Sequence record: MK250028.1
Reading direction: 5' to 3' (one strand)
DNA length: 64,000 nucleotides
The notes beneath the pieces are model-generated. The model was not told the DNA's origin. It did no database searches and was given only the letters and a program-made list of their open reading frames with translations. Below are positions 8,488 to 49,714 of this stretch, piece after piece (position 1 is the first letter of the stretch; each line of letters starts with the position of its first letter). The position numbers and the translations under genes were made by a program.

Positions 8488-8500
8488 CTTATATTATCCG

Positions 8501-10381: not shown

Positions 10382-10399
10382 TTTCTTTAAAAATTAATT

Positions 10400-16891: not shown

Positions 16892-17737
16892 ATGGGTAAG
16901 CAAAAAAGAAGTGAAAATACGTATCAGAAGATTAATACAATCTTTAAGAGAGATGCGAATAATGTAATTATGCCTTATGATGAGTTTGCACTTCCCGAAT
17001 TGGAATGGATGCGAAATTGTAAGTTTGATGCAGAATCTAAAATCGATGGTACTAATACTCGTATTGAGGTAACTCGTGAATTTATTACATCTGATATTGG
17101 TAATAATGAAGGTATTAGATGGAGTGTTGCATATAAGGGTAAAACTGATAATGCACAAATTCCAAAGATGTTGTATACTTATCTTACTACTGTTCTTACA
17201 GAAGATAAAGTTCTTAATTCACTAGGACTTACAAAAGAGATGTATGTCAATGATGAGTTGATGAAAGAAAAAGGGTGGTCTGTATTGAATGAACAGTTTA
17301 ATGTATATGAATTGGATGAAACAAAGATTCCTAAGAGATATACATTGTATGGTGAAGGTTACGGAAATGGAATACAGTCTGGTGGATACTACAGACAAGA
17401 TAATTCTTTTATCGGATTTGATGTAAAAGTTGATGATATGTATCTCCTTCGAGAAAATCGTGATGAGATCTTTAATAAATTAGGTGTTGATATTGTTCCA
17501 TTTGTAGGACAACTTACTATTGACGAAGCAATTGAAATGGTAAAGAAAGGATTTAGATCTAAAATTGCAAAAGATGATCATCTTGAAGAAGGATTGGTTC
17601 TTCGTACACCTATGGGTTTGAAGAATCGTAGAGGTGAAAGAATTATATTTAAAATTAAAACATGTGATTTCCAGAAATATTTTTCAAAGTATGGAACATA
17701 TGATAAGGTAGATCAACCAAAGAATGAAAACTTTTAA
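16892..17737 (+). CDS. RNA ligase (Rnl2-like nucleotidyltransferase)
   Basis: Motif I SKIDGTN, III LYGEGYG, IIIa FIGFDV, IV EEGLVLR, V IIFKIK. No in-frame TAG. Confidence 0.8.
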   Translation: MGKQKRSENTYQKINTIFKRDANNVIMPYDEFALPELEWMRNCKFDAESKIDGTNTRIEVTREFITSDIGNNEGIRWSVAYKGKTDNAQIPKMLYTYLTTVLTEDKVLNSLGLTKEMYVNDELMKEKGWSVLNEQFNVYELDETKIPKRYTLYGEGYGNGIQSGGYYRQDNSFIGFDVKVDDMYLLRENRDEIFNKLGVDIVPFVGQLTIDEAIEMVKKGFRSKIAKDDHLEEGLVLRTPMGLKNRRGERIIFKIKTCDFQKYFSKYGTYDKVDQPKNENF

Positions 17738-17970
17738 TATATGATAGAAATTATTGAAATATGGTTTCCTATTATTGCATTTATTGCATGTTCATATTTA
17801 ATATATATGGATAGAAAACATTTTAAGAAAGTTGAAAAAGAATTAGATAAAATAGAAAAAGATATTCATCATGAATAATTTTTTGATTTTATTTTTTTGT
17901 TTGAAATAAAATATGTATCTTTGTATTGTTAATAAAAATAATATTAATTAATTTTTAAATAATAAAAAAT

Positions 17971-18441
17971 ATGATTACACGTAAGGAACTTGTTGCTAAG
18001 TACAAGATTGCAGTTAAGCGAGTAAATGAGTTGGAGAACAAGAAGTATGAGTATAAGACTAATCGACCATGTGCTCCATTTGGTAATGTGAAGAATATGA
18101 ATATTCCTGACATTATTAGAGCTGGCGCAAATGTGCATGATAGTGATGCTAATGTAACAGAGCGTATTAAGCAGTATGGTATTTTTCCAGAGGATTTGAA
18201 GAATGCAAATGATCATTTGTATGAGGGATTTGCAATTTCTACATGGGACCACGATTTTAAACTTCGTGTAGAGCAAATTCACGATGAGAAGAAGTTGAAG
18301 ACATATAAGGAAGTAATGAATAAGTTGTCTGCTAACTTTACTGATGAGGATCGCTTCATGATTGAGATGGGTGAGATTGATGCACTTGACATCGATTTGG
18401 ATGATGATGCACCATCAGATGAAGTAAAGTCTGAAGAGTAA
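17971..18441 (+). CDS. Hypothetical early protein
   Basis: 156-aa ORF behind the GTATCTTTG box at 17915, with an acidic C-terminus. Confidence 0.75.
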   Translation: MITRKELVAKYKIAVKRVNELENKKYEYKTNRPCAPFGNVKNMNIPDIIRAGANVHDSDANVTERIKQYGIFPEDLKNANDHLYEGFAISTWDHDFKLRVEQIHDEKKLKTYKEVMNKLSANFTDEDRFMIEMGEIDALDIDLDDDAPSDEVKSEE

Positions 18442-18535
18442 TATTTGTTACTTAAACAAATATATGTATGGTTAATACTTAACCCAATGTGGTTGGGTAT
18501 TAACCATTTTTCATTTTTAATTAAATTAAACTAAT

Positions 18536-18835
18536 ATGGATGAATTTTTAAAACAACTCATATCTAAATATAAACCAAAGTTTTCTCGTGATAAACTTTT
18601 TGGTGGATATGATATTGATGTATATGATAGAGATCAGATAAAGCACGAAACAATTAATTATTTAAATGAACATTTTCAAAATCCTGATATAAAAAGTGAA
18701 GAGTATCATGATTATTATAAGAAAATGTTAATAATTAAAGAGTTCGCAGAAACATTTGAAACATATTTTGCAAATTTAAGTTTTAGATTACCAGTACCAT
18801 CAGGTACAGAAGTTTATTGTTCACAACGAGATTAA
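18536..18835 (+). CDS. Hypothetical protein
   Basis: 99-aa ORF in a tightly packed operon. Confidence 0.7.
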   Translation: MDEFLKQLISKYKPKFSRDKLFGGYDIDVYDRDQIKHETINYLNEHFQNPDIKSEEYHDYYKKMLIIKEFAETFETYFANLSFRLPVPSGTEVYCSQRD

Positions 18836-18838
18836 TAT

Positions 18839-19237
18839 ATGAATAGTTTTATTAAGTTAGATAATGGAATAGTTCTTAATATTTCACAAATAGAAACATT
18901 CGGACCAATTTGGCCATTTGACTTACTAGAGTTCGATGATTCACAACCTATAGGTGATAATATTGGCGATTCTGTTAAACGTTTATTTCAAGATAAAGAA
19001 CATAATAATATTGCAAAAGAAATGGTTAGAACTTCATTTGCTACACCATTAAATTGCAATGATAATATGAGAAAATACGGTGAAGGCAAAATACTTAATT
19101 ATACGGTTCTCTTAAAATCTGGTCATAAGTTTTTTATTACTGAAGCAGAATATAATAATATTTTGGAAGTTATGAATTTATCTGCAAATAATGTATATTC
19201 TAATGTAGATAAAAAGTATACTAAATTTGATTTTTAA
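18839..19237 (+). CDS. Hypothetical protein
   Basis: 132-aa ORF, 3 nt after the previous stop. Confidence 0.7.
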   Translation: MNSFIKLDNGIVLNISQIETFGPIWPFDLLEFDDSQPIGDNIGDSVKRLFQDKEHNNIAKEMVRTSFATPLNCNDNMRKYGEGKILNYTVLLKSGHKFFITEAEYNNILEVMNLSANNVYSNVDKKYTKFDF

Positions 19238-19239
19238 TT

Positions 19240-19856
19240 ATGAATTTTGAATACGAAACAACATGTTATAAATTTACAGACAATGATACATATGTCTCTA
19301 TTGATGATATATTGGATGAGATTGATAAGCATGCTATAAAAATAGGTTGTAGTACTAATAGACCAAAATCCGCAAATGAAATTATAAATGATAATTTGAA
19401 ACAATGGAATAATTTTGAGCCTTATTCAAATACATTTAGAAAGAAACATATTTGTTGGTTTCCTGTATATATACAAATTGGTTTAGATAAAGATCTTGCT
19501 GATTATTTTGTATTGAAAGATATTAGTAATGATTATCATAGAGCAATTTATTATAAGATTTCGGGTGAATATGCGTTTACATTGTGTTATGATGGTTATA
19601 TATATATAAGAGAGAATCGTTCTCAGATTATTGTGATTATCTTCCATGTTATGTATTACCGTGTACAGCAAAAGATGTATTAGCACATAATTCATGTTGT
19701 AAGTTAAAAGATACTGCATTATTGCTGAAGGAAATTTGGGAAGATGTAAAAAAGAACTATTCTGATGCAATTGAGCAAAACATATGGTTTGAAAATGGTT
19801 ATTACTACCATACAGAACATTATATAAAAAATAAGTTTATTCATTTTGATTTTTAA
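19240..19856 (+). pseudogene. Hypothetical gene frameshifted at a (TA)6 tract (19597-19608)
   Basis: Removing one TA unit joins ORF 19240 to a second open frame that ends ...KNKFIHFDF-TAA at 19856, 8 nt before the next gene. Confidence 0.6.
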
Positions 19857-19864
19857 TTTATTAT

Positions 19865-21247
19865 ATGTCAAAACAATACGATAAATTTAATTTGGAAGTT
19901 GAACAAGATCCACTTGTTCAACTTCATAAAACTGATTATAATAATTATAGTGATTTGTCACATTTTGTAGATGAATACTATAAAGCGCAAGCACTTATAA
20001 AGGAATGTGGTAATTTTTATAAATCTTTTCTTTTAAGTAAACTTTTAACCTATTCTAAACTTACAAATACTTCATACAAAGAAAATGAATATAATTTTTT
20101 TAATATTCATATAACAGGAATACCATATAAAGCTGAAACATATTGTCTATATGATATGTTTGATGATTTGGATAATGATTATAAAGGGTATTATAATTAT
20201 AAGTCATTGAAAGGATATGAAAAACTTGCATATTCACGTGCAGTATTTAAGTTTAAGGAATTTTGTGATAATTCTAAAGATAAGTTATTTACTATAAGAA
20301 TTGAATGTAACAGAACTTCATATTTTCCAGGAGATAAAGATAAAGAAACAAATTATTATTTTACATTTAATGATTATATTTTTAAATCATGTATGTGTGA
20401 ACATTATATTTCATCATATAGTTCTATAACATATAATAATAAGTATGATGAGGTAAATAATAAAGATCTTCAATCTAAATTAAAAAAACTGGTTGATAAA
20501 GAAAAGAAATCTTTATATGATTATATGAAAGAACTTGATTTTTTATATAAAAAAGAATTTGATACATTCTATAAAGATGAATTAAAAAAATTATTTAAAA
20601 CTATAAATGTTCCTATTATTTATATAAATATCGATAATGATTTAAAGGATTGTGCATATGCGTCATATAATTCATATAAGAAAAAAGTTAAATCAAAAGA
20701 TATAGATAAAGATATTAAAGAACTTACAGAAAAGTATAATAATGATGGTGAGCGAACATCATTATATTTAAGTGAAATATTATCTGATGATGAAATTGAT
20801 AATATGTTTGATTCTTTTGAATATAAAGGTTGGTATAGTATGTATGATTGGATCTTGAAATATATTAATGATAATTATTATAATAAGATTATTGAACTTG
20901 TAAAACGTAATATTGCAGATTCTACATATGCATATAGAACTATTATAAGAACATGTTCAGAATATAATAATAATCAAAAATTATATATTATAGGTAAACA
21001 TAATGAATCACATTATTTTTGTAATCAAAATGATGTAGATAAAATTAAAATAGAACTTATAGAAAGAGAATTAGTATGTACATATATAAAAGTTAATAAA
21101 CATCTTAAATACAGTTGGCCTTCGAATGCACCAACTGTTGTAAATGAATTGACGCGAACAGTTAAGTTTAATGTAGATACAAATTCTGTAAGTTCTTTTA
21201 AAGAATCAACAGATACATATGAAATAGCAAATAAAGATAGATATTAA
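19865..21247 (+). CDS. Hypothetical protein (460 aa)
   Basis: Long standard-code ORF, followed by a terminator hairpin (ATCTGTTACCTAA...TTAGGTAACAGAT-T tract). Confidence 0.8.
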   Translation: MSKQYDKFNLEVEQDPLVQLHKTDYNNYSDLSHFVDEYYKAQALIKECGNFYKSFLLSKLLTYSKLTNTSYKENEYNFFNIHITGIPYKAETYCLYDMFDDLDNDYKGYYNYKSLKGYEKLAYSRAVFKFKEFCDNSKDKLFTIRIECNRTSYFPGDKDKETNYYFTFNDYIFKSCMCEHYISSYSSITYNNKYDEVNNKDLQSKLKKLVDKEKKSLYDYMKELDFLYKKEFDTFYKDELKKLFKTINVPIIYINIDNDLKDCAYASYNSYKKKVKSKDIDKDIKELTEKYNNDGERTSLYLSEILSDDEIDNMFDSFEYKGWYSMYDWILKYINDNYYNKIIELVKRNIADSTYAYRTIIRTCSEYNNNQKLYIIGKHNESHYFCNQNDVDKIKIELIERELVCTYIKVNKHLKYSWPSNAPTVVNELTRTVKFNVDTNSVSSFKESTDTYEIANKDRY

Positions 21248-21351
21248 AATTAATCTGTTACCTAAGTTTTAGGTAACAGATTTTTTTATTTAAAATATTT
21301 GATGTATCTTTGTAATATAATAAATAAGTTAGATAATTAAAAAATAAAATT

Positions 21352-21558
21352 ATGATTAAATATATTTTTGCGTTTGTAATGTTCCTTATGGTATTTGGAA
21401 TTATCTGTTTGCCATTTTATGTAATTTATCAAGGATTCGTATTGGTTGCATCTGGTTCACTATGGGGAATTCTTTCTGTTGCCGTAGGATTGATTATACT
21501 TAGGTTGTTTAAACCTATTTCAAATTTGTATGAAAATAAAGATTTTAAAATATTTTAA
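21352..21558 (+). CDS. Small membrane protein
   Basis: Two hydrophobic stretches; lies behind the early promoter box at 21304. Confidence 0.65.
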   Translation: MIKYIFAFVMFLMVFGIICLPFYVIYQGFVLVASGSLWGILSVAVGLIILRLFKPISNLYENKDFKIF

Positions 21559-21561
21559 CAT

Positions 21562-21981
21562 ATGGTTTACATTGATATTAAAACAGTTTCATATAATGAA
21601 CTTAAGAATTTGATTAATTCAGAAGCATTTATGTTTGATAATGAAAATGATTCAAATGTAAATCTTACTAAATTGATTCAACCGATGTTTATTAAAATTA
21701 TGTGCAGAGATACATTACGTATTAACGCATATAAGGATAATATTGGTAAAGTTCATATTATGAATGGAGAGAATGAATTTTCAGCTATTAATGAATTGAT
21801 AAGTGGAAATATTTGTATTACAGATTTTCCTGAATCATTTAAGCAGTTCAATAATCTTCCATATAATGAATGGCATTCATATAATAAGAAACAAATAGAG
21901 ATTACACCTGTATTTGAACTTCATATTTTGGAATGTCCTAATGAAGATGAAAAACAGTTTTATTTAAATATGATTAAATAA
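21562..21981 (+). CDS. Hypothetical protein
   Basis: 139-aa ORF in operon spacing. Confidence 0.7.
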   Translation: MVYIDIKTVSYNELKNLINSEAFMFDNENDSNVNLTKLIQPMFIKIMCRDTLRINAYKDNIGKVHIMNGENEFSAINELISGNICITDFPESFKQFNNLPYNEWHSYNKKQIEITPVFELHILECPNEDEKQFYLNMIK

Positions 21982-22043
21982 ACATTTTTATTGTTCTTCA
22001 TTATAAATAGTTGTGAAAGATTAAAATAAAATAATTAATAACT

Positions 22044-22592
22044 ATGGACGATCAGAAACAATATATACAGGATGATAATGAGAATGTATATAAGGTTATG
22101 CCAACTCATTATCTTAAATTATCTCCATGGAATGATGGTGAGGATCGTCGTGTAATGGAGAAAGATATAAATGGATATAAGTATATATCATATAAAAACG
22201 CATGTATGATTATTAATAATCAATTTGCGAATAAGACAGAAAAATGGACACATAATGGTAAGGAGTACATTGCATCAAAAATAAATGAAGATAAATCTGT
22301 AGATGAATATACAGCTTTAATCAGTATGCTACCAAACCATAAAGCTATCCTTCATGATAGCAAGAATCTCATGAAACATTTTAAAGATGAAATGTCTCTT
22401 ACAATTACATCTGAGGATAATAGTACAGAATTGAAAATGGTTAAACATAAGGGAAAGATTTATTATATTCTTCTTTTAAATAAACCATGTTCTCGAGTAA
22501 AAGCATATAATCTTTTTGGAGAATTTGTTCAATGGGTAGGAATTAAAGATTGCAAACCTATTTTTTGTGAAACAACTAAAAAATATATTTAA
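22044..22592 (+). CDS. Hypothetical protein
   Basis: 182-aa ORF with TATAAATA at 22002-22009 upstream. Confidence 0.7.
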   Translation: MDDQKQYIQDDNENVYKVMPTHYLKLSPWNDGEDRRVMEKDINGYKYISYKNACMIINNQFANKTEKWTHNGKEYIASKINEDKSVDEYTALISMLPNHKAILHDSKNLMKHFKDEMSLTITSEDNSTELKMVKHKGKIYYILLLNKPCSRVKAYNLFGEFVQWVGIKDCKPIFCETTKKYI

Positions 22593-22594
22593 TT

Positions 22595-23080
22595 ATGAAA
22601 TTACATAACGGCATTTATCATACAAGAAATTCATATAGTAAAGACTGTAAATTTTGGAAAGAAAAGTGTATTCCTTATATTGAATGGTATAAGAAACATC
22701 GACTTAGAAATATTCAATTGAGAGAACATAGAATTCCAGATGATTATGATAAGAGAGATGTTATGTCTCATCTTATGCATTGTTATACAGATTTATATAT
22801 GCAATCACATATTGGACGTGTAAAGAAATCTGTTATACGAAAAATATTTAATTATTGGTATAAACAACCGGGCGCATATCTTAAGAATGATGAATATCTT
22901 AATTATGATATTTTAACACCATATCCTATGTATACAGGAGATAGAGATGATGTTAGATTCCCTGTAGGTGAACCGGGTTGTTTTATTCTCTATATTACAT
23001 TATTTAAAAGAAATAAGAATGCTCTTACGAAGAAACAACAAAAATTATTGAATGAACTTCATTCATATAGAGAAAAATAA
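22595..23080 (+). CDS. Hypothetical protein
   Basis: 161-aa ORF in operon spacing. Confidence 0.7.
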   Translation: MKLHNGIYHTRNSYSKDCKFWKEKCIPYIEWYKKHRLRNIQLREHRIPDDYDKRDVMSHLMHCYTDLYMQSHIGRVKKSVIRKIFNYWYKQPGAYLKNDEYLNYDILTPYPMYTGDRDDVRFPVGEPGCFILYITLFKRNKNALTKKQQKLLNELHSYREK

Positions 23081-23101
23081 ATAATTAAAAATAAATTTAT
23101 T

Positions 23102-23956
23102 ATGAATAATTTTGATGATGCAATAAAAAAGAAATTATTAGAAGATGTTAATAATTTCAATGATATAATTTATAATAGAAAGACTATTAATGAAAGTTCT
23201 ATTAATAGAATGTTTTATTGGATTAATACATGTGATTGCGCATTTATTACTGCATTTAGATATGAATTAACAAATGTAGTAAATCCTGATAAAACATATT
23301 ACGGACCTAATAATGATTGGAAAGATAAAAAGATATTCACTCATGAAGAGAATCGCATGAAGAATAAATTGCTTTATGGTGAATTACTTAAATTAAAATA
23401 TGGTGTTATCAAGGTAAAAGGTGTATATCCAGAAGGTATGGATAAAGAATCATCTGAAGAAAGTTATTTAGTTGTAAATAGATTTAATGATCTTGAATTT
23501 TTAAATAATATTTTAAGATTAGGAGAATTTTATAATCAAGACTCTATCTATTATAAGCCGAAGAATAAAACATATGGTTATCTTATAGGCACGAATAATG
23601 CATACCCAGGTTATCATAAGAAAGGAGATGAAAGTACATTAAAATTAGGTACTGCTTCAAATTTTATGTCACGACTTGGAAATAAAGCATTCTCATTTAT
23701 TCCAAAAAATGCTATTAAATTTAATAATAAAGAAGATGCAGTAAATACAGAATCTGAATATCAAAAGTATTGGACAGATTATTCAGGAACGTCATTTAAA
23801 GATAGAAAAAAGAACAGAACAATAAATCCTAAATTACAAGAAGCTTTAGAATTTTGGAGAACTAATTTAGGTGGTATTGATATTATTGAAAAAATGCATC
23901 CAAAAACAAGATTATGTATGTTTAGTTTTTTAAGAGAAAATTTAAATAATGAATAA
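23102..23956 (+). CDS. Conserved T4-like phage protein (gp30.3-like)
   Basis: Pattern FITAFR...N..KN..L...L....YGVIKVKGVYPE...EESYLV...LG..YNQDSI, recognised from T4 30.3-like proteins. N-terminal INESS. Confidence 0.5.
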   Translation: MNNFDDAIKKKLLEDVNNFNDIIYNRKTINESSINRMFYWINTCDCAFITAFRYELTNVVNPDKTYYGPNNDWKDKKIFTHEENRMKNKLLYGELLKLKYGVIKVKGVYPEGMDKESSEESYLVVNRFNDLEFLNNILRLGEFYNQDSIYYKPKNKTYGYLIGTNNAYPGYHKKGDESTLKLGTASNFMSRLGNKAFSFIPKNAIKFNNKEDAVNTESEYQKYWTDYSGTSFKDRKKNRTINPKLQEALEFWRTNLGGIDIIEKMHPKTRLCMFSFLRENLNNE

Positions 23957-24959
23957 TAAAGATAATTAGATAATTTCAAAATATATAGAAAATAATTCTA
24001 TTAAAAAGAATTGTCAATATTGGAATCATATAGATACAGATGATCAAATTTATATTAAAGATAAATTTAAACATATCAAAGATATAAAATTATCAGAATG
24101 TCTCTATATGATTCTTCATCATTTAGATAATAGGCCAATTTGTCCTATATGTCATAAAGAAATAAAACTAGAAAGATTCTCATTAGGATACAAAACATTT
24201 TGCTCTAATACATGTAAATATTCAGATAAAGGAAAACAACTTATTCATGAAAAACAAAAGGAGACATGTTTAGAAAAATATGGAGTTAATAATCCAATGA
24301 AAGATATTTCTATCAAAAATAAATCTATATCTAAATGTAAAGAAACAAATAAACGAAAATACAATGTTGAATATAATTTTCAACGTGAAGATATAAGAAA
24401 ACAAATTATTCAAACAGTAAAAAATAAAACCGGTTATGAATATGCGTTTTTAAATAAAGAAAAAGTATTATATACATTACATAATAAATATGGCTCTGGT
24501 ATAGATAATGTATTTCAATTAGATAGCATTAAAGATAAATCGAATAAAACAAAAGAATTAAATAATAGTTTTAATACTTCTAAATATGAAGATTTAACAT
24601 ATGAAATATTAAGAGAACATTATAGTAATGTAATAAGACAATTTAAATCAGAATTATATCCATTTAATTGTGATTTTTATATTGTAGATAAAGATACATA
24701 TATAGAAATAAATGCAAGTTGGACACATGGCAAACATCCATTTAATGAGGATGATTTAAATGATGTTAAACTTTATAATGAATGGATGAATAAATCAGAC
24801 TATTATAAGAATTCTGCTTATAATTGGAGATTTAGAGATACAAAGAAAAGGAATATTGCAAAAGAAAATAATTTAAGATATTTTGAAATATTCCCTATAA
24901 ATATAGAAGATTTAAAAAATAAATTGAAAAAAATTATTCAAAAAATAGACAATTTATAA
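23949..24959 (+). CDS. Free-standing homing-endonuclease-like protein with a TAG at codon 7
   Basis: ATG 23949 overlaps the upstream stop and is in frame with track ORF 24108-24959. CPICH...FCSNTC zinc motif, basic repeats, and a C-terminal CDFYI...IEIN..WTHG nuclease-like motif. Confidence 0.7.
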
Positions 24960-25001: not shown

Positions 25002-26126
25002 ATGCCTAAGAAAGTTTAGTTTGAAGAATTTGAGTAGAGATTAAAAAATAAATTTGGTGATAAGTTTAAATATATTGATTTAAGTTTAATAGATAAAGAA
25101 AACTTTAATTATTTAGATAAGTATCCTATTAAATGTTTAATACATAATAAAATAGCATATAAAGAGCCGAAAATCTTTTTAAGATCTACAACATTAAATA
25201 TATGTAGTAAATGTCAAAGGGAATAGCAAGTTCGTGATTCACATAAAATGCATGAAGGTAAAGAAAGACATTATACATCAGTTGATGAATTTCTAGAGCG
25301 TTTATATTAGAAATATAAAGATAAAATAACTATTGATAAAAATGATATTTTATTAAATAAAAATGGTTCAGTAAATTTTTCATAGAAAATGAAATTTATA
25401 TGTCAAAAACATGGTGAATTTTATTGTAAACCATCCGATATATTTCGTTCAACTCATGGATGCTCAAAATGTGCTAATGAATATATGAAATTAAAAAATA
25501 TTCAATATGGTGAAGAACGAAGATAGTCATTTATAAATGATGCTATTAAAATTCATGGTAATCAATATGATTATTCAAAGGTTGATATAACAGGTAAACT
25601 AAAAAAAGTTGAAATTATATGTAAAGATCACGGTTCATTTTTTATGATGCCATCTTTACATTTAAGAGGTGAAGGTTGTAAACTTTGTAATAAAACAAAT
25701 TTATTAAATTGTGAACGACGTTTATATCAAATATTAATTGATAATTTTCCTAATGAAGAAATTATTAAATAGTATCATAACTTTTTAGGAAGACAAAGTT
25801 TAGATTTTTATTTTCCTAAATATAAAATAGGAATAGAATATCAAGGTAAGCAACATTTTGTTACTAGTGAATATTTACATAATGACACAAGGCATTCATT
25901 AAAACATTAGAAAGAACTTGATGAAAAGAAGTTCAATAAATGTAAAGAACATAATGTTACACTTTTATATTTTACATTTGATAAATAGTATGAAAATATT
26001 GAATATTACTCAAAACTATATGTAAATATAAAAGACTTAATTGAAAAAATACAATATATAATAAATAATTACAATGTTTGCGTTAATAGTAATACAGACA
26101 TTGAGCAACAAAAATTAAATACATAA
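25002..26126 (+). CDS. Free-standing homing endonuclease (zinc-ribbon repeats plus Vsr/EDxHD-like nuclease), TAG-recoded, 374 aa
   Basis: Missing from the track because of many in-frame TAG. Repeats CQKHGEF...GCSKC and CKDHGSF...GCKLC, then LDFYFPKYKIGIEYQGKQHF. TATAAATA at 24969-24976. Confidence 0.75.
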
Positions 26127-26132
26127 TAAATT

Positions 26133-29100
26133 ATGAGCAACAAAAAAGTAGTTGGAATTGATTTAGGTACTGGAAACAGTGCGGTAGCCATCATTGAGAA
26201 TGGCGTAGCTAAAGTAATTGAAAATGCAGATGGTTATAAGACAACTCCATCTGTTGTGTACATCAAGGGTGATGAAACAAAAATTGGTGCAGCCGCAAAA
26301 CGTGGTATGGTAATGAATCCAAAGAATACCATTTCATTTGTAAAGCGTTTTATGGGTGCTAAATGGGATGATCCTGATGTACAGAAGATGTTAAAGATGG
26401 TAACATATGATGTTATCGATGAAAATGGAAATCCTCGTCTTAAGATTGACGATAAAACATATTCACCAGAGCAAATTTCATCTATGATTCTTAAGAATAT
26501 GTATGAAGTTGCAAAGGGATTCTATGGAACAGAAGATTGTAAAGACGCTGTTATTACTGTTCCTGCATGGTTTAATGATATTCAGCGTAATGCTACAAAG
26601 GTAGCAGGTCAGTTGGCTGGTTTGAATGTTCTTCGTATTATTAATGAGCCAACTGCAGCAGTTCTTTCTTCAAATATTGATACAAAATCAGGAGACAAGA
26701 TTGTTCTTGTTAATGACCTCGGTTGTAAACATTCTGTTACTGCATCCGCGCTTGCTGCTTAATCACTAAAGCAAGTGTAAAGTTAAAAACCCGTTAATTG
26801 CTGAGAGTCCCACGTTAGATATATACTAATGATAAAAATGGTCTTAAATACCGCTATTAGATGGTGACATACTAATTAGCACCAACTTTAATGTGTTGGG
26901 TATGGTAAAAAGTTTAAGAATTGGGTGACCGCCGTAAATCTTAAAATATATTAAGATAGAGCATCCAAGTATCTTGGTAACAAGATAAAGGTTCAACGAC
27001 TAGAAAAAGTAATCCTATTAATTTAGGAAGAAATTTCCACGAATGCGGGTTAGTTTGGAAGTGGTACAAGTGATATAAGATAAATATTAAAAAGAATGTT
27101 TATCTTATGATTAATACAGAGTTCTTTGATTTATTGATTAAACATATACTTAAATTATATGATGAAAATAATAATGAAATTAAATTTAATGAAATAACAT
27201 ATAAATTTGAAAAACGAAAATTTTCATCAGTTACAAGTTTAGTTATATATGTAGATAATATATCACTAACATAGAAATAGTATCGTTCATATTTTATATT
27301 ATATAAATGTAGATGTGGTCGAGAACATAAAATATTATTACAAAAATATTTCTTAAAAAAGAAATTACATTGTATTAATTGCTGTTAGGATAGAAGTTTT
27401 GATGATTATGTAATAGCGTATTATAAAGGTAAAATTAAAGAAAATAAACAAATAATATTAAAAGAATTTGATGAATATGATGATTAGTTTAAAGAAAATT
27501 ATAAAAGAAATCATTTATCAAATGAAGAATTTAAAAAATATTTACCTTATATTTATAAAATTAATAATCATTTAATAACAGAAGATATATTAAATAATAT
27601 AGTATATTATTATACAGAACATGTTAATAATCAATTTAAATTTACTGTTAATATTTCTTTTGATAATGGTATTACAAAAGAACCTATAAAATAGTTATAT
27701 TTAAAATGTAATACATGTGGACGTATATTTAAAATACATACAAATAATATAAGATTACAAGATTTATCAAATATTCAATGTAGAAAATGTAAATTAGTAA
27801 ATACTACATATCCTATTAAAAAATATAAAAATACTAATATAACATATTAGTCAGGAATTGAAAAAGAATTTATTGATTTTTGCTTTTCTAATAATATTGA
27901 AATTGAAAATGGTAAAGAAATTATTTATGAATTTGATAATAAAGTAAGAACATATATAACAGATTTTTATTTACCATAGTTTAAATATATTATAGAACTT
28001 AAAGCTAAAAATAAGTTTTATAGAGATGATTTAAAATCTGGTAAAATTGAAGCAAAAAATAAGGTATGTATTGATTATTGTAATAAAAATAATTTAGAAT
28101 TTAAGTTTGTGTTTGATTATGAATTAAATGAATTTAATCAATAGCTTCTAAATGAAAGAGATAGTCTTGAGGAATGAAAGTTCCTCGGTAAGATAAAGAG
28201 CTTACAAAGTTAAATAGAAACAAATAGGGTACAGAGGATGTTTCTATTGTTGAGATTTCTGATGGTATGATTGAGGTTCTTGCATCTGATGGTGATGTGT
28301 TCCTTGGCGGTCAGAATTATGATAATGCCATTGTTCAGTGGCTTATCGATGAGTTTAAGAAAGATACAGGTATTGATTTGAGTAAGGATAAGATGGCATA
28401 TGCACGTCTTGTAGAGGCAGCAGAGAAAGCAAAGTGTGAGTTGTCAACTACTACTCAGACAGAGATTAACCTTCCTTATATTACTGTATCTGATGGTGTT
28501 CCTCAGATGTTGATTAAGACTCTTAATCGCGCTACATTTGAGAGACTTACAGAAGATCTTACAAATAAGGTTGTAGAGATTGCACATCGTGCTGTAGAGA
28601 AGGCAGGTATTACAGAGGATCAGATTAGTGAGATTCTTCTTGTTGGGGGCTCTTCACGTATTCCTTCAGTTCAGGATGCATTGGAGAAGTCATTTAACAA
28701 ACCTTTGAATAAGACCTGTAATTTTGATGAGGCTGTTGCACTTGGTGCTGCTATTCAGGCAAATACACTTGCAGGTAATGCAACAGAGGATTCAGTACTT
28801 CTTTTGGATGTTACACCAATTTCACTTGGTATTGAGGTAAATGGTTGTGAGATGGCTAAGTTGATTGAAGCTAATACAACTATTCCTACACGTAAGTCAC
28901 AGACATTTACAACTGCAGTAGATAATCAACCAGCTGTAACTATTAAGGTACTTCAGGGTGAACGTCCAATGTCCGCTGATAATAAGGTAATTGGTACATT
29001 TAATTTGGAGGGTATTGCACCAGCTCCTAAGGGTGTTCCTCAGATTGAAGTAACATTTGATATTAATGCGGATGGTATTCTTGAAGTAACTGCAAAGGAT

Positions 29101-29598
29101 AAGGGTACAAATAAGGAACAGAAGGTAACAATTCAGTCTCCTAACGCACTTTCTGATGAAGAGATTGCACGTATTAAGGCAGATGCTGAGAAGTTTGCAG
29201 AAGCAGATAAGAAGAAGAAAGAGGAAGTTGATAAGTTGAATACTGCAGAACAATATGCAACACAGGTTCAGAAGTATATTGATGATGAGAAAACAGGTGC
29301 ATCTGTTCCATCTGATAAGAAAGAAACATTGAAGACAAAGATTACTGCAGTTCTTGATGCAGTTTCTAAGAAGGATGTATCAGCAGCAGAGACTGCACGT
29401 GCAGATCTTGAAACTGTATTTAAACCTATTGTTGAGGAAATGTATAAGAATGCAGGTGGTGCAACAGCAGGTCAACCTCAGAATGAATCACAGGGAAATC
29501 CATTTGCTAATGCAGGATTTGGTGATGCAAATGCTTCAACTTCTGATACTAAGGCAGATGATGACGTTCAAGAGGCAGATTTTGAGGAAGTAAAGTAA
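26133..29598 (+). CDS. dnaK: DnaK (Hsp70) chaperone, spliced from exon 1 26133-26726 and exon 2 28228-29598
   Basis: GIDLGT, TVPAWF and RIINEPTAA in exon 1. Joining gives NDLGC|GTEDVSIVE, equivalent to the conserved DLGGGTFD. Exon 2 has LVGGSSRIP, LLDVTPISLG and ends EADFEEVK. Confidence 0.92.
26727..28227 (+). mobile_element. Group I intron in dnaK
   Basis: 5' splice U26726 pairs with G26742 in P1. P10: CATTCTGTTAC (26730-40) pairs with exon 2 start GTACAGAGGATG. P3 AACCCGT (26788-94)/GCGGGTT (27045-51). R GTTCAACGACTA (26991-27002). S/P7' TAGTC (28162-66). P9 GAGGAA/TTCCTC. Terminal G28227. Confidence 0.88.
27107..28177 (+). CDS. Intron-encoded endonuclease (zinc fingers plus PD-(D/E)xK/TnsA-like domain), TAG-recoded, 356 aa
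   Basis: ATG 27107 to TGA 28177 with eight in-frame TAG by my count. CRCG, CINC, CNTC and CRKC motifs, then YITDFYLP.FKYIIELKAK. Confidence 0.75.
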
Positions 29599-29782
29599 TA
29601 AAAATATAAGGTCTTGAAATATAGACCTTATTCTAAATAAGTTATATATATTATAACAATATACAATTTAGAAATAATGAAAACTATTAAAGGTGAGTAA
29701 AAGTATGTAAAGAAGGGACGTTATCATGAGAATTGTATAACGTCCCTTTTTATGTTTAAACATTAATTTATTTGATTTAAAT

Positions 29783-30871
29783 ATGACAAAAGACTTGTAT
29801 GATATATTAGGTATTGAGAAAGGTTGTAATGATCAGAAAAAGATTAAAACTGCATTTAGACAACTTTCTAAGAAATACCATCCAGATATGCAGAGAGGAA
29901 AATCAGATGCAGAGGTAAAGGAAGCTGAGGAAAAGTTTAAGGATGTTAACCATGCATATGAAGTTTTGAGTGATCCTCAAAAGAAAGAGAATTATGATAA
30001 TTTTGGTGATGAAAATGGAAGACCAAATCCATTTGGTGGTTCCGGTGGTTTTAATCCATTTGGTGGTGATTTTGATCCATTTGGAGGATTTAATCCATTT
30101 GGAGGATTTGGTGGAAGTTCACGTCAGAAGAAAAATCAGGTTCAACCAGGTAGGGATATTCAGATGAAGATTCCTGTATCTATTGAAGATATATTTAAGG
30201 GAGTTAAGAAGAGTGTTAAATTTAAGAGAAACGTAAGGTGTTCTGTATGTCATGGTGCAGGTGGAACTGGTCAGAAGACATGTCCAAAGTGTCATGGAAC
30301 TGGTAGAATTATTCATCAGCAGCAATTTGCAATGGGGTCATTCTCTATTCATGAAGAAGTTTGTCCATTGTGTCATGGAACTGGTTTTTATGTAGAGAAC
30401 AAATGTGATAAGTGTGGTGGTTCTGGATTTGATAAGAAAGAAGTAAAACTTGATATTGAATTACCATCTGGAGTACAGAATGGAGAATATCGTGTATATA
30501 GTGGTGAAGGATCCGAATCAAAGAATATTTCAGGACCTAATGGTAATTTTATCGCTATTGCAGATTATACGTTTGATACAGATAGGTATCAGGTTGATGG
30601 GTTGAATGTAGTTGAACATATTCATGTCCCTTATTATAAATTGTTGCTTGGCTGTTCATATACTCTTAATATTCCTTCTGGTGTAAGTAAGGTTGTTAAG
30701 TTGAAGAGTTGTATTAAGGAAGGAACAATTATGAGATTAACCGGCGAAGGACTTAAGAGGTCTGATGGCCAAAAGGGTGATTACTTCATTTGTGTTCATT
30801 ATCAATTTCCAGAAGACCTTAGTGCGAATGATAGAGCATTGCTTGAAGTTATAGAGAAAAACAATAAATAA
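29783..30871 (+). CDS. dnaJ: DnaJ (Hsp40) co-chaperone
   Basis: J domain with HPD, G/F-rich region, four CxxCxGxG repeats and a C-terminal domain. Confidence 0.95.
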   Translation: MTKDLYDILGIEKGCNDQKKIKTAFRQLSKKYHPDMQRGKSDAEVKEAEEKFKDVNHAYEVLSDPQKKENYDNFGDENGRPNPFGGSGGFNPFGGDFDPFGGFNPFGGFGGSSRQKKNQVQPGRDIQMKIPVSIEDIFKGVKKSVKFKRNVRCSVCHGAGGTGQKTCPKCHGTGRIIHQQQFAMGSFSIHEEVCPLCHGTGFYVENKCDKCGGSGFDKKEVKLDIELPSGVQNGEYRVYSGEGSESKNISGPNGNFIAIADYTFDTDRYQVDGLNVVEHIHVPYYKLLLGCSYTLNIPSGVSKVVKLKSCIKEGTIMRLTGEGLKRSDGQKGDYFICVHYQFPEDLSANDRALLEVIEKNNK

Positions 30872-42217: not shown

Positions 42218-42624
42218 GGGGATGAATTTGGATTTGCTTATTAATTATGTGGTAATAAATCGTGTAGGAATGTTAATAGCCTTTTGTAGCAATACAAAGA
42301 AACTTAGCAAATAAATTTAAATGACGACGAAATAGAATTTCGTATGGCAGCTTAATCCTGATAGGATTGGTAATATACACCCATTGAAGCATTTGCTCCT
42401 TACACGGTAAGTTTGAGCATTGTCACAGAGTTCGTAAGAGTGATAATCTCTGTTAAATAAAACTCTTACATATACTTATTCATTGTCCAATAAGAGTGAT
42501 TATGACATTAAACTATTTAACTCTAATAACACAGATATAAATGAAAACTAATAAAGACATACGCACGTAGATAGTTTATTATTGACAAGTTAGTAATACG
42601 TGGTTTCGAGTACCACCATCTCCA
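42218..42624 (+). ncRNA. ssrA: tmRNA, tag peptide (A)DDEIEFRMAA
   Basis: 5' GGGGATG pairs with 3' CATCTCC-A, including a G3-U70-type pair. T arm GTGGT-TTCGAGT-ACCAC. Tag ORF 42323-42355 follows ATAAATTTAAAT and ends GCA GCT TAA. Confidence 0.9.
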
Positions 42625-42763
42625 CATTTTTAGATTATATTTCATAATATAGAATTTTTAATTGTTTAATTTTGTAAATGAGTTGTATGTTTAGATAAAC
42701 ATATGACTCATTTTTTTGTATAATAATAAATAAGATAATAAAACTAAATATAAGCATAAATAT

Positions 42764-48757: not shown

Positions 48758-48831
48758 GGTCCGTCTGGTGTAATTGGTAACATGACAGATTGTGGTTCTG
48801 TTGTTCAGGGTTCGAGCCCCTAACGTGACCC
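48758..48831 (+). tRNA. tRNA-His (GUG), imperfect acceptor and T stems
   Basis: Anticodon arm ACAGA-TTGTGGT-TCTGT and T loop TTCGAGC. Confidence 0.75.
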
Positions 48832-48849
48832 AAAATATTATTAATATTT

Positions 48850-48926
48850 AGCGTAGTGGCCCAGTTGGTCTAAGGCACCTGTTTTGGGAACAGGTTAGAT
48901 CGCACGTTCGAATCGTGTCTACGCTA
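48850..48926 (+). tRNA. tRNA-Pro (UGG)
   Basis: AGCGTAG/CTACGCT acceptor, CCTGT-TTTGGGA-ACAGG and GCACG-TTCGAAT-CGTGT. Confidence 0.9.
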
Positions 48927-49115: not shown

Positions 49116-49124
49116 CAAGTAAAT

Positions 49125-49705: not shown

Positions 49706-49714
49706 TATTTATTT

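What the first reader, a model, noticed from the sequence alone, without database searches (positions are those of the whole stretch)
26727..28227. Group I intron inserted in the ATP-binding DLGxGT motif of a phage dnaK
Seen: P1, P10, P3, P7 and P9 pairings plus the terminal G define a 1501-nt intron. Removing it restores NDLGC|GTED in frame; unspliced RNA would give a 209-aa truncated DnaK. Established: phage group I introns mostly target DNA-metabolism or packaging genes at conserved motifs. A chaperone host gene is unusual. The spliced motif (DLGCGTED versus DLGGGTFD) is also atypical.
Basis: partly seen in the sequence, partly recalled or inferred. Interest (0 to 1): 0.7.

Follow-up and report, generated by a model that had tools for sequence, protein, structure and literature searches.

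The report
Self-splicing intron in megaphage dnaK
The intron carries a homing-nuclease gene that can be read only with the phage's reassigned TAG codon, and the same intron sits at the same site in many related huge phages.

Summary
Confirmed. The window is a Prevotella phage Lak-B1-type megaphage (100% identity). Its dnaK is split into 26133-26726 and 28228-29598 by a 1501-nt insertion, 26727-28227. Uninterrupted dnaK alleles in Lak-A1 and Lak-A2 break at exactly these two positions and read NDLGC|GTED, so the unusual motif is native to Lak DnaK.

The insertion is a group I intron. Exon 1 ends in U, paired with G in P1, and the intron ends in G. It has P1-P10 with a P5abc-type extension, a P7.1 extension and P9.1. 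Rfam's Intron_gpI model aligns over its whole length to a natural 442-nt ORF-less allele (28.8 bits, E 2e-5). That score is below the curated cut-off, and the model does not hit the window's own copy.

Fourteen copies at the same dnaK site come from 11 phage lineages whose DnaK is 40-100% identical. They show many compensatory changes, and the guide sequence tracks the flanking exon codons.

Loop L8 holds a 356-codon ORF (27107-28177) with 8 in-frame TAG codons, read as Gln. It encodes two Cys4 knuckles and a TnsA-like PD-(D/E)xK nuclease and is under purifying selection. Its last codons are themselves P8', J8/7, P7' and P9.

Contigs from three animal-gut RNA libraries carry the exact exon-exon joint. 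This supports splicing but does not prove it.

Verdict: a new member of a known kind.

The parts
26133..26726 (+). dnaK exon 1 (198 codons, no TAG). The last bases CGGUUGU 26720-26726 are the 5' strand of P1.
   Evidence: HSP70 profile 1-194, E 2e-69. Ends exactly where Lak-A1/A2 homology breaks.
26727..28227 (+). Group I intron, 1501 nt. U at -1 (26726), terminal G at 28227.
   Evidence: Absent precisely from Lak-A1, Lak-A2, L009 and L011. RF00028 aligns full-length to the ORF-less allele L010, 28.8 bits, E 2.3e-5. Covariation.
26727..26741 (+). Intron 5' segment that pairs with the first ~15 nt of exon 2 (28228-28242): an extended P10.
   Evidence: Duplex -10.5 kcal/mol here. Mean of cognate pairs -9.7 versus -6.2 for non-cognate pairs in 12 introns. 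Follows exon-2 codon changes.
26742..26748 (+). Internal guide sequence GCAUCCG, the 3' strand of P1. G26742 pairs with U26726 at the splice site.
   Evidence: Same 3 bp + U-U mismatch + 3 bp geometry in 11 of the 12 introns tested; the most divergent copy, L045, pairs all six positions. The guide covaries with the exon: GGUUGU/GCAUCC, GGUGGU/GCCUCC, GGUGCU/GGCUCC, GGUGGU/GCUACC.
26749..26777 (+). P2 hairpin. Loop L2 holds UAA 26760-26762, the first in-frame stop after exon 1.
   Evidence: In all 14 introns the first in-frame stop is a UAA in L2, at intron nt 28, 31, 34 or 49, before P3.
26789..26794 (+). P3 5' strand ACCCGU. Pairs with 27045-27050.
   Evidence: 6/6 pairs in every intron, with at least 9 different sequences. 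Five of six pairs show double changes.
26799..26963 (+). P4-P5 domain. P4 26799-26802/26960-26963. P5 CCCA 26809-26812/UGGG 26922-26925. P5a 26842-26852/26904-26919 with A-rich bulge 26908-26912. P5b 26853-26880. P5c 26882-26899. Optional hairpin 26938-26957.
   Evidence: RNAalifold on 12 sequences; most pairs have compensatory changes. The hairpin 26938-26957 is absent in 6 lineages.
26964..26992 (+). P6 (26964-26966/26990-26992) and P6a with GUAA tetraloop (26971-26986).
   Evidence: The third P6 pair is seen as C-G, G-C, A-U, U-A and G-U. P6a keeps GNRA loops GUAA, GAAA and GUGA. In this window G26964 is U, which weakens the first P6 pair.
26993..27002 (+). J6/7 and the P7 5' strand (UCA ACGACUA).
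   Evidence: Matches the Rfam consensus GUUCAaAGACUA. Nearly invariant in 14 introns: one base of J6/7 differs in L041.
27003..27044 (+). Extension between P7 and P3', a subgroup IA-like feature. Outer helix GAAA 27003-27006/UUUC 27034-27037. Inner hairpin UCCUA 27013-27017/UAGGA 27024-27028. Conserved CACGAAU 27038-27044.
   Evidence: Both helices covary, e.g. GAGG/CCUC, GUAA/UUAC, GGU/ACC.
27045..27050 (+). P3 3' strand GCGGGU.
27053..27062 (+). P8 5' strand GUUUGGAAGU. Pairs with 28144-28153 across the 1.1-kb loop L8.
   Evidence: Cognate duplexes mean -10.5 versus -4.2 kcal/mol for non-cognate. Every lineage has a different 7-14-bp P8.
27075..27108 (+). Hairpin in L8 whose 3' strand includes the AU of the ORF's start codon (ATG 27107).
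   Evidence: Read from the sequence. The stem is kept in Lak-C1 and Lak-B4. Any function is inferred.
27107..28177 (+). Intron ORF, 356 codons, 8 in-frame TAG read as Gln. Homing endonuclease with two Cys4 knuckles and a C-terminal PD-(D/E)xK nuclease (E252, D286, E297-x-K299).
   Evidence: Open only with TAG=Q. TAGs are replaced by sense codons in Lak-C1. 56 homologues. dN/dS 0.20 versus C1. Model pLDDT 88. TnsA Z 8.9, I-Bth0305I Z 7.8. Pfam TnsA-like_N in 14 of 25 members.
28144..28153 (+). P8 3' strand GCUUCUAAAU. Also codons L-L-N of the ORF.
28154..28167 (+). J8/7 (GAAAGAGA) and the P7 3' strand (UAGUCU). Also codons E-R-D-S-L of the ORF.
   Evidence: Matches the Rfam consensus AAGAUAUAGUCu. 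One base changed in 84 versus Lak-C1 over the 3' core.
28169..28186 (+). P9 hairpin GAGGAAU-GAAA-GUUCCUC. The ORF stop UGA is 28175-28177.
   Evidence: Every lineage has a different 4-9-bp stem here; 10 of the 11 lineages (13 of 14 copies) have a GAAA or GAGA loop, and L041 has a six-base loop.
28188..28205 (+). P9.1 hairpin GUAAG/CUUAC with conserved loop AUAAAGAG.
   Evidence: 4 of 5 pairs have compensatory changes.
28228..29598 (+). dnaK exon 2 (456 codons plus stop, no TAG).
   Evidence: HSP70 profile 196-599, E 4e-135. In frame with exon 1 after removal of the intron.

Best explanation
A mobile, self-splicing group I intron sits between the codons for Cys198 and Gly199 of the phosphate-binding motif (DLGC|GTED) of the Lak megaphage dnaK.

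**Splicing (structure shown, chemistry inferred).** In the pre-mRNA the guide sequence 26742-26748 pairs with the last bases of exon 1, forming P1 with a U-G wobble at the cut. The first ~15 intron bases pair with the start of exon 2 (P10). The P3-P9 core with P5abc, P7.1 and P9.1 extensions folds around them. A free guanosine attacks after U26726, and then the exon-1 3'-OH attacks after G28227. This gives an mRNA for a 654-aa DnaK.

**Protection from ribosomes (inferred).** A UAA kept in frame in loop L2 stops ribosomes that run from exon 1 into unspliced RNA before they reach the core.

**Homing (inferred).** Loop L8 carries a homing endonuclease gene of the TnsA-like PD-(D/E)xK kind. The enzyme is expected to cut intron-less dnaK alleles, such as Lak-A1, in co-infections, so that repair copies the intron in.

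**Timing (inferred).** The ORF contains 8 TAG codons, the first at codon 56. It can be made full-length only once the phage reads TAG as Gln. Its last 34 nt are P8', J8/7, P7' and the start of P9. The most likely consequence is that splicing of the TAG-free dnaK message and endonuclease synthesis are separated in time.

**Shown:** boundaries, structure, covariation, the ORF and its fold, polymorphism among alleles, and the exon-exon joint in RNA-library contigs.
For: **Boundaries**
- Intron-less alleles define the boundaries to the base.

**Ribozyme**
- RF00028 aligns over model positions 1-253 to the natural 442-nt ORF-less allele, 28.8 bits, E 2.3e-5. The P8-J8/7-P7'-P9 part also hits the 584-nt allele.
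- 14 introns from 11 lineages lie at the same dnaK site. All have U at -1 and a terminal G.
- P1 guide and exon covary in four combinations.
- P3 pairs 6/6 everywhere, with at least 9 sequences.
- Cognate versus non-cognate duplex energies: P3 -7.1 versus -2.5, P8 -10.5 versus -4.2, P10 -9.7 versus -6.2 kcal/mol.
- RNAalifold finds 57 pairs, 35 of them with compensatory double changes. P9.1 has 4 of 5. P9 stems differ in every lineage and all but one lineage keep a GAAA/GAGA loop.
- Between Lak-B1 and Lak-C1 the core diverges 5.5% (5' part) and 1.2% (3' part), while exon dS is 0.36-0.38.

**Endonuclease**
- The ORF is open only with TAG=Q. TAG alternates with sense codons in C1.
- Code 15, a CTA-anticodon suppressor tRNA and release factor 2 are reported for Lak phages (PMC6784885).
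- dN/dS is 0.20.
- The fold is PD-(D/E)xK with invariant E...D...ExK.
- 9 of 9 sampled homologues, plus L036, lie between two HSP70 fragments.

**Alleles**
- Deletion alleles keep the core but lose the ORF: Lak-B4/B7/B8 at 584 nt and L010 at 442 nt.

**RNA**
- A joint from 26726 to 28228 ('skips 1501') appears in contigs of 3 of 4 animal-gut metatranscriptomes from 3 studies.
- Intron-bearing contigs occur in the same libraries, and exon unitigs end exactly at the splice sites.
- Exon markers in those contigs match an intron-bearing lineage (L010) rather than the known intron-less ones.

**Codon use**
- dnaK and dnaJ have 0 TAG. The intron ORF has 8.
Against: - No Rfam match reaches the curated gathering score of 50 bits. 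The window's own copy gives no RF00028 match at all.
- The exon-exon joint in RNA libraries could come from intron-less phage alleles or from contaminating DNA.
- One of the four RNA runs (X17) shows contigs across both intron boundaries and no joint.
- This window's copy has a G-to-U change at 26964 that weakens the first P6 pair. P1 carries a conserved U-U mismatch.
- Cleavage by the endonuclease, the timing of dnaK expression and the timing of TAG reassignment are not shown for this phage.
Confidence: 0.93

Rival explanations
1. The element is a decayed group I intron that no longer splices in this phage. dnaK is then a split or dead gene, and the joints seen in RNA libraries come from intron-less relatives.
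For: The joint in RNA contigs is not proof of splicing. Intron-less alleles exist. X17 shows unspliced boundaries only. The window's copy carries U26964 in P6. Exon 2 has an internal ATG at 28267.
Against: The core is far more conserved than synonymous sites. The guide sequence matches the Lak-specific Cys codon. dnaK exons are under purifying selection, dN/dS about 0.1, in intron-bearing lineages. The in-frame L2 stop and P10 pairing are maintained. In X18 the joint and an intron-bearing contig share exon unitigs, and the exon markers are of the intron-bearing L010 type.
Confidence: 0.05
2. A free-standing nuclease gene, not an intron, was inserted into dnaK. The two halves are translated separately and perhaps reassemble.
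For: Two free-standing endonuclease-like ORFs lie just upstream of dnaK. Gene callers annotate two HSP70 fragments in all relatives.
Against: About 430 nt of non-coding sequence flanking the ORF is conserved and folds into a covarying group I core. It also persists after the ORF is deleted. Exon 1 has no stop of its own. The insertion is precise to the base at a U|G context.
Confidence: 0.015
3. The interruption is an intein, a group II intron or an assembly artefact.
For: None beyond the fact that the gene is interrupted at a conserved motif, which inteins also favour.
Against: The insert length is 1501, which leaves a remainder of 1 on division by 3, and the exon frame hits a stop after 12 codons. 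There is no Hint or reverse-transcriptase domain and no group II match in Rfam. The same structure occurs in at least 9 independently assembled Lak genomes and many other contigs.
Confidence: 0.005

Closest known systems
   Same: A self-splicing group I intron in a phage protein gene, inserted at a highly conserved motif. It has an extra helical insertion between P7 and P3', carries a homing endonuclease ORF in a peripheral loop, has the start codon in a hairpin, and depends on endonuclease translation not disturbing the ribozyme.
   Different: The host gene is a chaperone (dnaK), not a DNA-metabolism gene. The ORF sits in L8 and its 3' end overlaps P8', J8/7, P7' and P9. The intron has a P5abc-type extension with an A-rich bulge, which I know from Tetrahymena-type (IC1) introns and not from td. 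The endonuclease is PD-(D/E)xK, not GIY-YIG. The likely timing device is a reassigned stop codon rather than a late promoter. The subgroup was not formally assigned.
Recoded group I intron endonuclease in 'Agate' phages (Borges et al., bioRxiv 10.1101/2021.08.26.457843)
   Same: The intron endonuclease carries in-frame reassigned stop codons while the intron sits in a gene that does not use them. The authors propose that the intron splices early and the endonuclease is made only late.
   Different: There the codon is TGA read as Trp in a different phage clade, and the host gene is described only as an early gene. Here it is TAG read as Gln in Lak phages and relatives, and the host gene is dnaK. 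Relatives that use the standard code carry the same intron and ORF without TAG.
I-Bth0305I, in the recA group I intron of Bacillus phage 0305phi8-36 (PMC3239194; PDB 3r3p)
   Same: A multidomain endonuclease encoded in a phage intron, with a C-terminal restriction-endonuclease-like (Vsr/PD-(D/E)xK superfamily) catalytic domain. It is the top Foldseek match (probability 0.99) and has Z 7.8.
   Different: I-Bth0305I defines the 'EDxHD' lineage. The Lak enzyme has the classical E...D...E-x-K signature and is at least as close to TnsA (Z 8.9; Pfam Tn7_TnsA-like_N). It has two Cys4 knuckles upstream. Sequence identity is about 16%.
Group I introns and inteins that fragment genes of crAss-like and Jug gut phages (PMC12880540)
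   Same: Gut phages of Bacteroidota with many genes interrupted by group I introns, with splicing supported by metatranscriptome reads across junctions.
   Different: The genes named there are terL, nrdD and DNA polymerase, and the introns average about 206 nt. dnaK is not mentioned. For Lak phages only tRNA introns had been reported (PMC6784885).

Membership tests
Group I intron (Rfam RF00028 Intron_gpI) | 5' splice site after a U that forms a U-G wobble in P1 with an internal guide sequence | tested here: met
   U26726 pairs with G26742. P1 has the same geometry in 11 of the 12 introns tested (L045 pairs all six positions), and the guide covaries with the exon codons.
Group I intron (Rfam RF00028 Intron_gpI) | Terminal guanosine at the 3' end of the intron, and P10 pairing with the 3' exon | tested here: met
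   G28227. All 14 introns end in G. P10 cognate duplexes are stronger than non-cognate ones.
Group I intron (Rfam RF00028 Intron_gpI) | Conserved core P3-P4-P5-P6-P7-P8-P9 in the canonical order, with the P3/P7 pseudoknot | tested here: met
   The Rfam alignment covers the whole model on L010. RNAalifold finds 57 pairs, 35 with double compensatory changes. P8 and P3 pass the cognate tests.
Group I intron (Rfam RF00028 Intron_gpI) | Conserved J6/7-P7 and J8/7-P7' sequences (guanosine-binding site) | tested here: met
   GGUUCAACGACUA and AAAGAGAUAGUCU align to the consensus GUUCAaAGACUA and AAGAUAUAGUCu. They are almost invariant in 14 introns.
Group I intron (Rfam RF00028 Intron_gpI) | Score at or above Rfam's curated gathering threshold (50 bits); an operational criterion, not a biological one | tested here: not met
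   No match on the window's ORF-bearing copy. 17 bits on the 584-nt allele. 28.8 bits, E 2.3e-5, on the 442-nt allele. The large P5abc and P7.1 insertions and the L8 insert explain the shortfall.
Group I intron (Rfam RF00028 Intron_gpI) | Precise excision at the RNA level | tested here: inconclusive
   The exact 26726|28228 joint occurs in contigs of 3 of 4 metatranscriptomes, alongside intron-bearing contigs. Intron-less DNA alleles exist and no matched DNA or control stretch could be laid.
Group I intron (Rfam RF00028 Intron_gpI) | Guanosine-dependent self-splicing in vitro | not testable with these tools
   Needs transcription and splicing assays.
Group I subgroup IA (IA2, typical of phages) | Extra helices between P7 and P3' (P7.1/P7.2) | tested here: met
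   Two covarying helices lie at 27003-27037.
Group I subgroup IA (IA2, typical of phages) | Assignment by subgroup-specific covariance models | not tested
   Subgroup models are not available here. The P5abc-like extension is not typical of IA2 as I know it, so the subgroup stays open.
PD-(D/E)xK homing endonucleases | Restriction-endonuclease-like fold of the catalytic domain | tested here: met
   Model pLDDT 88. Residues 231-356 match TnsA Z 8.9, NGO0050 Z 7.8, I-Bth0305I Z 7.8 and Vsr Z 7.0. Pfam TnsA-like_N matches 14 of 25 members.
PD-(D/E)xK homing endonucleases | Catalytic E...D...(D/E)-x-K residues conserved | tested here: met
   E252, D286, E297 and K299 are invariant in 25 sequences with 27-90% identity.
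PD-(D/E)xK homing endonucleases | Cleaves the intron-less allele near the insertion site | not testable with these tools
   Needs enzyme and substrate. The natural target would be the Lak-A1 dnaK site.
EDxHD lineage (I-Bth0305I) | E-D-x-H-D catalytic motif of Vsr type | tested here: not met
   The alignment shows D286 and E297-x-K299 and no conserved His in the nuclease domain. It is therefore not filed under EDxHD.
Intein | In-frame insertion with Hint splicing domain | tested here: not met
   Length 1501 is not a multiple of 3. There is a stop after 12 codons and no Hint domain.

The most novel reading that the evidence does not exclude
Stop-codon reassignment acts as the clock of a mobile intron. 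While the infected cell still reads TAG as stop, ribosomes on the intron ORF fall off at codon 56, about 870 nt before the ORF runs into P8', J8/7 and P7'. The ribozyme can then fold and the TAG-free dnaK message is spliced. Once the phage's suppressor tRNA takes over, the endonuclease is made and homing can occur, at the cost of splicing. The in-frame UAA kept in loop L2 in all lineages would be the matching guard on the exon-1 side. If so, this intron family, which exists in both recoded and standard-code huge phages, is a natural paired experiment on how code change regulates selfish elements.
Probability: 0.35. Interest if true: 0.65.

Novelty: new member of a known kind. Interest (0 to 1): 0.5.

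Why it matters
- **Annotation.** It corrects Lak and related megaphage annotation. The two 'HSP70 fragment' genes and the apparently broken ORFs between them are one dnaK plus one mobile intron with an intact endonuclease.
- **Host genes.** It adds a chaperone gene to the list of phage genes colonised by group I introns. For Lak phages only tRNA introns had been described.
- **A clean data set.** The family offers intron-less, ORF-less and full alleles within one phage group. It has copies in phages whose DnaK is only about 40-50% identical, guide sequences that track exon codons, and copies in both TAG-recoded and standard-code genomes.
- **Uses.** This makes it a good system to study the homing cycle, co-evolution of ribozyme and host gene, and the proposed use of stop-codon recoding to time gene expression.
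- **Practical point.** Rfam's single group I model at its curated threshold misses the element, and misses it altogether when the ORF is present. Similar introns are therefore probably under-counted in huge phages.

Tried and rejected
- **Rfam on the window.** At gathering threshold and at E up to 10 on 26500-28500 there was no group I match. A whole-window scan at E up to 1 found no other intron. The model matched only on natural ORF-less alleles.
- **The window's own assembly** is not held. The nearest record has just the one copy of the intron core, so paralogous introns elsewhere in the genome were not surveyed.
- **Single-sequence MFE folding** of the 584-nt allele is well below shuffles (z -7) but does not give the native pseudoknotted topology. 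I did not use it for the model.
- **A P1a hairpin** (AACA/UGUU) that I first drew in the intron's 5' end was dropped in favour of P10. That segment covaries with exon 2.
- **A hairpin UUGG/CCGA** that RNAalifold predicts at 26921-26932 never varies and competes with P5 (CCC/GGG). P5 has one supporting double change (U-A in L041 and L044). I kept P5, but this is weakly supported.
- **A possible L2-L9.1 loop-loop contact** was looked at by eye. No covariation was seen, so it is not claimed.
- **The endonuclease sequence** gave nothing in the PDB. In Pfam it gave only a weak zinc-ribbon match. Family assignment needed the homologue set and the fold.
- **IMG/VR** held few extra copies of the endonuclease. 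The diverse introns came from look-ups of individual homologues.
- **Formal covariance-model building** was not attempted. The ORF-less intron (442 nt) exceeds the 400-column limit.
- **The count of structure pairs was not used,** to avoid typing long structure strings. I used RNAalifold counts and a cognate versus non-cognate duplex test instead.
- **Literature searches** for a group I intron in dnaK or hsp70 found nothing relevant.
Full report
**1. What the window is**

The region 26000-29700 is 100% identical to Prevotella phage Lak-B1 and Lak-B9, and differs by a base or so from B2, B3, B5 and B6. It is 90% identical to Lak-C1 and about 88% identical, in two pieces, to Lak-A1 and Lak-A2. 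Lak phages are about 540-550-kb gut megaphages. The literature reports that they read TAG as glutamine (code 15), encode a CTA-anticodon suppressor tRNA and release factor 2, and use TAG only in parts of the genome (PMC6784885).

**2.

- Under table 11 an ORF at 26133-26762 (209 aa) matches HSP70 profile positions 1-194.
- 28228-29598 matches HSP70 profile positions 196-599.
- Joining 26726 to 28228 gives one frame of 654 codons reading ...VNDLGC|GTEDVSIVEI....
- Lak-A1 and Lak-A2 carry an uninterrupted dnaK. BLAST homology to the window breaks exactly at 26726 | 28228, and the A1 sequence across the site is GGTTGT|GGTACA.
- The motif DLGCGTED is therefore native to Lak DnaK. Other phage DnaKs fetched here have the canonical DLGG|GTFD.

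**3. It is a group I intron**

*Rfam.* The single group I model does not see the window's copy, which has 1.1 kb inserted in one loop. Nature provides deletion alleles:
- Lak-B4, B7 and B8 have a 584-nt intron lacking 917 nt of the interior.
- An IMG/VR Lak-like genome (L010) has a 442-nt version.

On the 584-nt allele RF00028 matches P8-J8/7-P7'-P9 (17 bits, E 0.09). On the 442-nt allele it aligns over the whole model, positions 1-253, at 28.8 bits and E 2.3e-5. This is below the curated 50-bit cut-off. The helices land where I had placed them by hand.

*A family at the same site.* The intron ORF has 56 database homologues. All nine that I looked up lie between two HSP70 fragments, as does one more from IMG/VR (L036). 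This gave 14 introns from 11 lineages at exactly the same dnaK site, in phages whose DnaK is only 40-83% identical to the Lak protein. In all 14 the exon ends in U and the intron ends in G.

*P1.* The guide sequence follows the exon:

| Exon 1 end | Guide sequence |
|---|---|
| GGUUGU | GCAUCC |
| GGUGGU | GCCUCC |
| GGUGCU | GGCUCC |
| GGUGGU | GCUACC |

In 11 of the 12 introns tested the geometry is the same: three pairs, a conserved U-U mismatch, then three pairs ending in the U-G wobble. The most divergent copy, L045, pairs all six positions. The Lak-specific Cys codon (UGU) is thus matched by an A in the Lak guide.

*Other helices.*
- **P10.** The first ~15 intron bases are complementary to the first ~15 bases of exon 2 and change with the exon-2 codons (GTED, GTTD, GTHD, STLD, STTD, GTLD).
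- **P3.** Pairs 6/6 in every intron, with at least nine different sequences.
- **P8.** Bridges the 1.1-kb loop and is a different 7-14-bp helix in each lineage.
- **P9.** A different 4-9-bp stem in each lineage. Ten of the eleven lineages have a GAAA or GAGA loop; L041 has a six-base loop.

*Cognate versus non-cognate strand combinations* (mean duplex energy):

| Helix | Cognate (kcal/mol) | Non-cognate (kcal/mol) |
|---|---|---|
| P3 | -7.1 | -2.5 |
| P8 | -10.5 | -4.2 |
| P10 | -9.7 | -6.2 |

*RNAalifold.* On the stretch from P3 to P3' in 12 sequences it finds 57 pairs, 35 of them with double compensatory changes. These are P3, P4, a P5a-P5b-P5c three-way extension with an A-rich bulge, P6, P6a with a GNRA loop, and a two-helix extension between P7 and P3'. 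In P9.1, 4 of 5 pairs have double changes. The P7 strands and J8/7 are almost invariant and match the Rfam consensus.

*Conservation.* Between Lak-B1 and Lak-C1 the 5' core differs at 5.5% of positions and the 3' core at 1.2%. The synonymous divergence of the exons is 0.36-0.38.

*Subgroup.* The helices between P7 and P3' are a subgroup IA feature. The P5abc-type extension is one I know from Tetrahymena-type introns. I did not assign a subgroup.

**4. The interior is an intact homing endonuclease gene, visible only with the phage's code**

*The ORF and the code.*
- With TAG read as Gln, 27107-28177 is a 356-codon ORF with 8 TAGs.
- Evidence for the code from this locus: the ORF has no TAA or TGA over 356 codons. 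Four TAGs are replaced by GTT, GAA, TAT and AAA in Lak-C1.
- Some homologues are called 'with TAG=Q', while others in standard-code phages have no TAG.

*Selection.* The protein is under purifying selection, dN/dS 0.20 against C1. Its dS of 0.27 is close to that of the exons, which suggests it has diverged together with its host gene.

*Conserved residues.* An alignment of 25 members with 27-90% identity shows two invariant Cys4 knuckles and E252...D286...E297-x-K299.

*Fold.* The AlphaFold model has mean pLDDT 88. Residues 231-356 match:

| Structure | Z |
|---|---|
| TnsA | 8.9 |
| Neisseria Vsr-like protein NGO0050 | 7.8 |
| Homing endonuclease I-Bth0305I | 7.8 |
| Vsr | 7.0 |

I-Bth0305I is also the top Foldseek match. 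Pfam Tn7_TnsA-like_N matches 14 of the 25 members. The enzyme is a classical PD-(D/E)xK nuclease, not of the EDxHD type.

*Overlap with the ribozyme.* The last codons, L-L-N-E-R-D-S-L-E-E-stop, are encoded by P8', J8/7, P7' and the first strand of P9. This explains why that peptide is conserved in the family.

*Start codon.* The start codon lies in the 3' strand of a hairpin at 27075-27108.

**5. Two features that look like protection of the ribozyme from ribosomes**

- In all 14 introns the first in-frame stop after exon 1 is a UAA in loop L2, upstream of P3. The distance from the splice site varies (intron nt 28, 31, 34 or 49), but always in steps of three.
- dnaK (654 codons) and the downstream dnaJ have no TAG. 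The intron ORF has 8, the first at codon 56.

Borges et al. proposed, for a TGA-recoded intron endonuclease in Agate phages, that such stops keep the endonuclease from being made until late. Here the ORF also runs into the catalytic core. Early termination at TAG would therefore keep ribosomes off the core. This is inference. The timing of dnaK expression and of recoding was not tested.

**6. RNA evidence**

I laid contigs of four animal-gut metatranscriptomes on 26100-29650.
- **The joint.** Three of them, from three studies, contain a contig with the joint from 26726 to 28228 ('skips 1501', ends AA..AG). One is 1808 nt long, with 301 nt of exon 1 and 1305 nt of exon 2.
- **Intron contigs.** The same libraries hold intron contigs. 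In X18 one contig runs exon 1, then the L010-type ORF-less intron, then exon 2, at depth 14.8. The joint contig has depth 73.7. The exon contigs stop exactly at 26726 and start exactly at 28228, as expected for a bubble between spliced and unspliced forms.
- **Exon markers.** Two of the exon-1 variants in these contigs (26225C, 26246A) tell the alleles apart, and both match the intron-bearing L010 lineage rather than the intron-less A1, A2, L009 and L011 alleles. A third (26609) does not match L010.
- **Caveats.** These are contigs, not reads. The libraries may hold DNA, and intron-less DNA alleles exist. One run (X17) shows only unspliced boundaries.

I count this as support, not proof.

**7. 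Population picture**

Within Lak phages there are four allele types:
- full intron: B1, B2, B3, B5, B6, B9 and C1;
- core with the ORF deleted: B4, B7, B8 and L010;
- no intron: A1, A2, L009 and L011.

Lak-A1 and Lak-C1 differ at only 4 of 594 exon-1 positions, yet one lacks and one has the intron. This is the pattern expected from cycles of homing, endonuclease decay and loss.

**8. Comparison and verdict**

*Closest known.* By mechanism and parts this is an ordinary mobile phage group I intron. The closest known cases are:
- the T4-type phage introns;
- the I-Bth0305I recA intron, for the nuclease fold;
- the recoded intron endonuclease noted in Agate phages, for the code logic.

*What is new, as far as my searches show*:
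- the host gene, dnaK;
- the existence of a whole family fixed at this site across huge phages with different genetic codes;
- the exon-tracking guide and P10 sequences;
- the conserved in-frame L2 stop;
- the overlap of the ORF with the core.

*Rejected alternatives.* The alternatives are an intein, a group II intron, a free-standing nuclease insertion that splits the gene, an assembly artefact and a dead intron. They are excluded or unlikely for the reasons given under rivals.

*Confidence.*

| Claim | Confidence |
|---|---|
| The element is a group I intron with these boundaries | about 0.93 |
| It splices in vivo in this phage | about 0.85 |
| TAG recoding times endonuclease synthesis against splicing | about 0.35 |

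Noticed in passing
window 51045-51159 (+): A 115-nt match to the Rfam tRNA model (36 bits) that ARAGORN does not call. It is probably the intron-containing tRNA reported for baboon Lak phages (Devoto 2019). It lies in a tRNA cluster at 48758-51659.
   Followed up: no
window 42218-42627 (+): A phage-encoded tmRNA (Rfam RF00023, 47.3 bits, full-length).
   Followed up: no
window 23949-24959 and 25002-26126 (+): Two free-standing homing-endonuclease-like ORFs directly upstream of dnaK. The first has 1 TAG and matches DUF7487 and phrog_3339. The second has 9 TAGs, matches phrog_559 and phrog_681, and ends 7 nt before the dnaK ATG. Both share only the D-F-Y...I-E nuclease motif with the intron endonuclease (E 0.001 and 0.1).
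   Followed up: partly
window 16892-23956, 26133-30871 versus 6232-11371, 42764-44650, 55326-62630: TAG (Gln) use is patchy. dnaK, dnaJ and a block of upstream genes have none, while several large ORFs have 11-21 each. The AT-rich endonuclease ORFs (GC 0.17-0.22) are TAG-rich islands inside the TAG-free block.
   Followed up: partly
window 29783-30871 (+): dnaJ (DnaJ, CXXCXGXG, DnaJ_C) follows dnaK. Related phages with the same intron also carry grpE or hsp20 between them (L027, L030), so these huge phages encode a chaperone set.
   Followed up: no
window 26721-26726 / 28228-28239 and the same site in L027-L045: In the intron-bearing phage clade the DnaK phosphate-2 motif is unusually variable: DLGC|GTED, DAGG|GTTD, DFGG|GTHD, DLGG|STLD, DFGG|STTD, DCGA|GTHD. 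Uninterrupted DnaKs of other phages all read DLGG|GTFD. Possible causes are drift of the endonuclease target or relaxed ATPase constraints. This is unexplained.
   Followed up: partly
window 26964: The window's intron has U where Lak-B4, C1, L010 and all other lineages have G, at the first pair of P6 next to P4. It is a slightly weakening, lineage-specific change in the B1-type copy.
   Followed up: partly
L002:1028-1611 (Lak-B4) and L010:3559-4000: Two independent ORF-less forms of the intron. B4 keeps the first ~27 and last ~20 codons of the ORF and has a G-to-U change in the inner P7.1 hairpin. L010 has a clean 23-nt loop on P8 with compensatory changes in P8.
   Followed up: yes
RNA run X15, window 27797-28060: A 264-nt contig, about 92% identical, within the endonuclease ORF in a metatranscriptome whose dnaK intron contig is of the ORF-less type. 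Either a second intron form or a related endonuclease gene is present in that sample.
   Followed up: no
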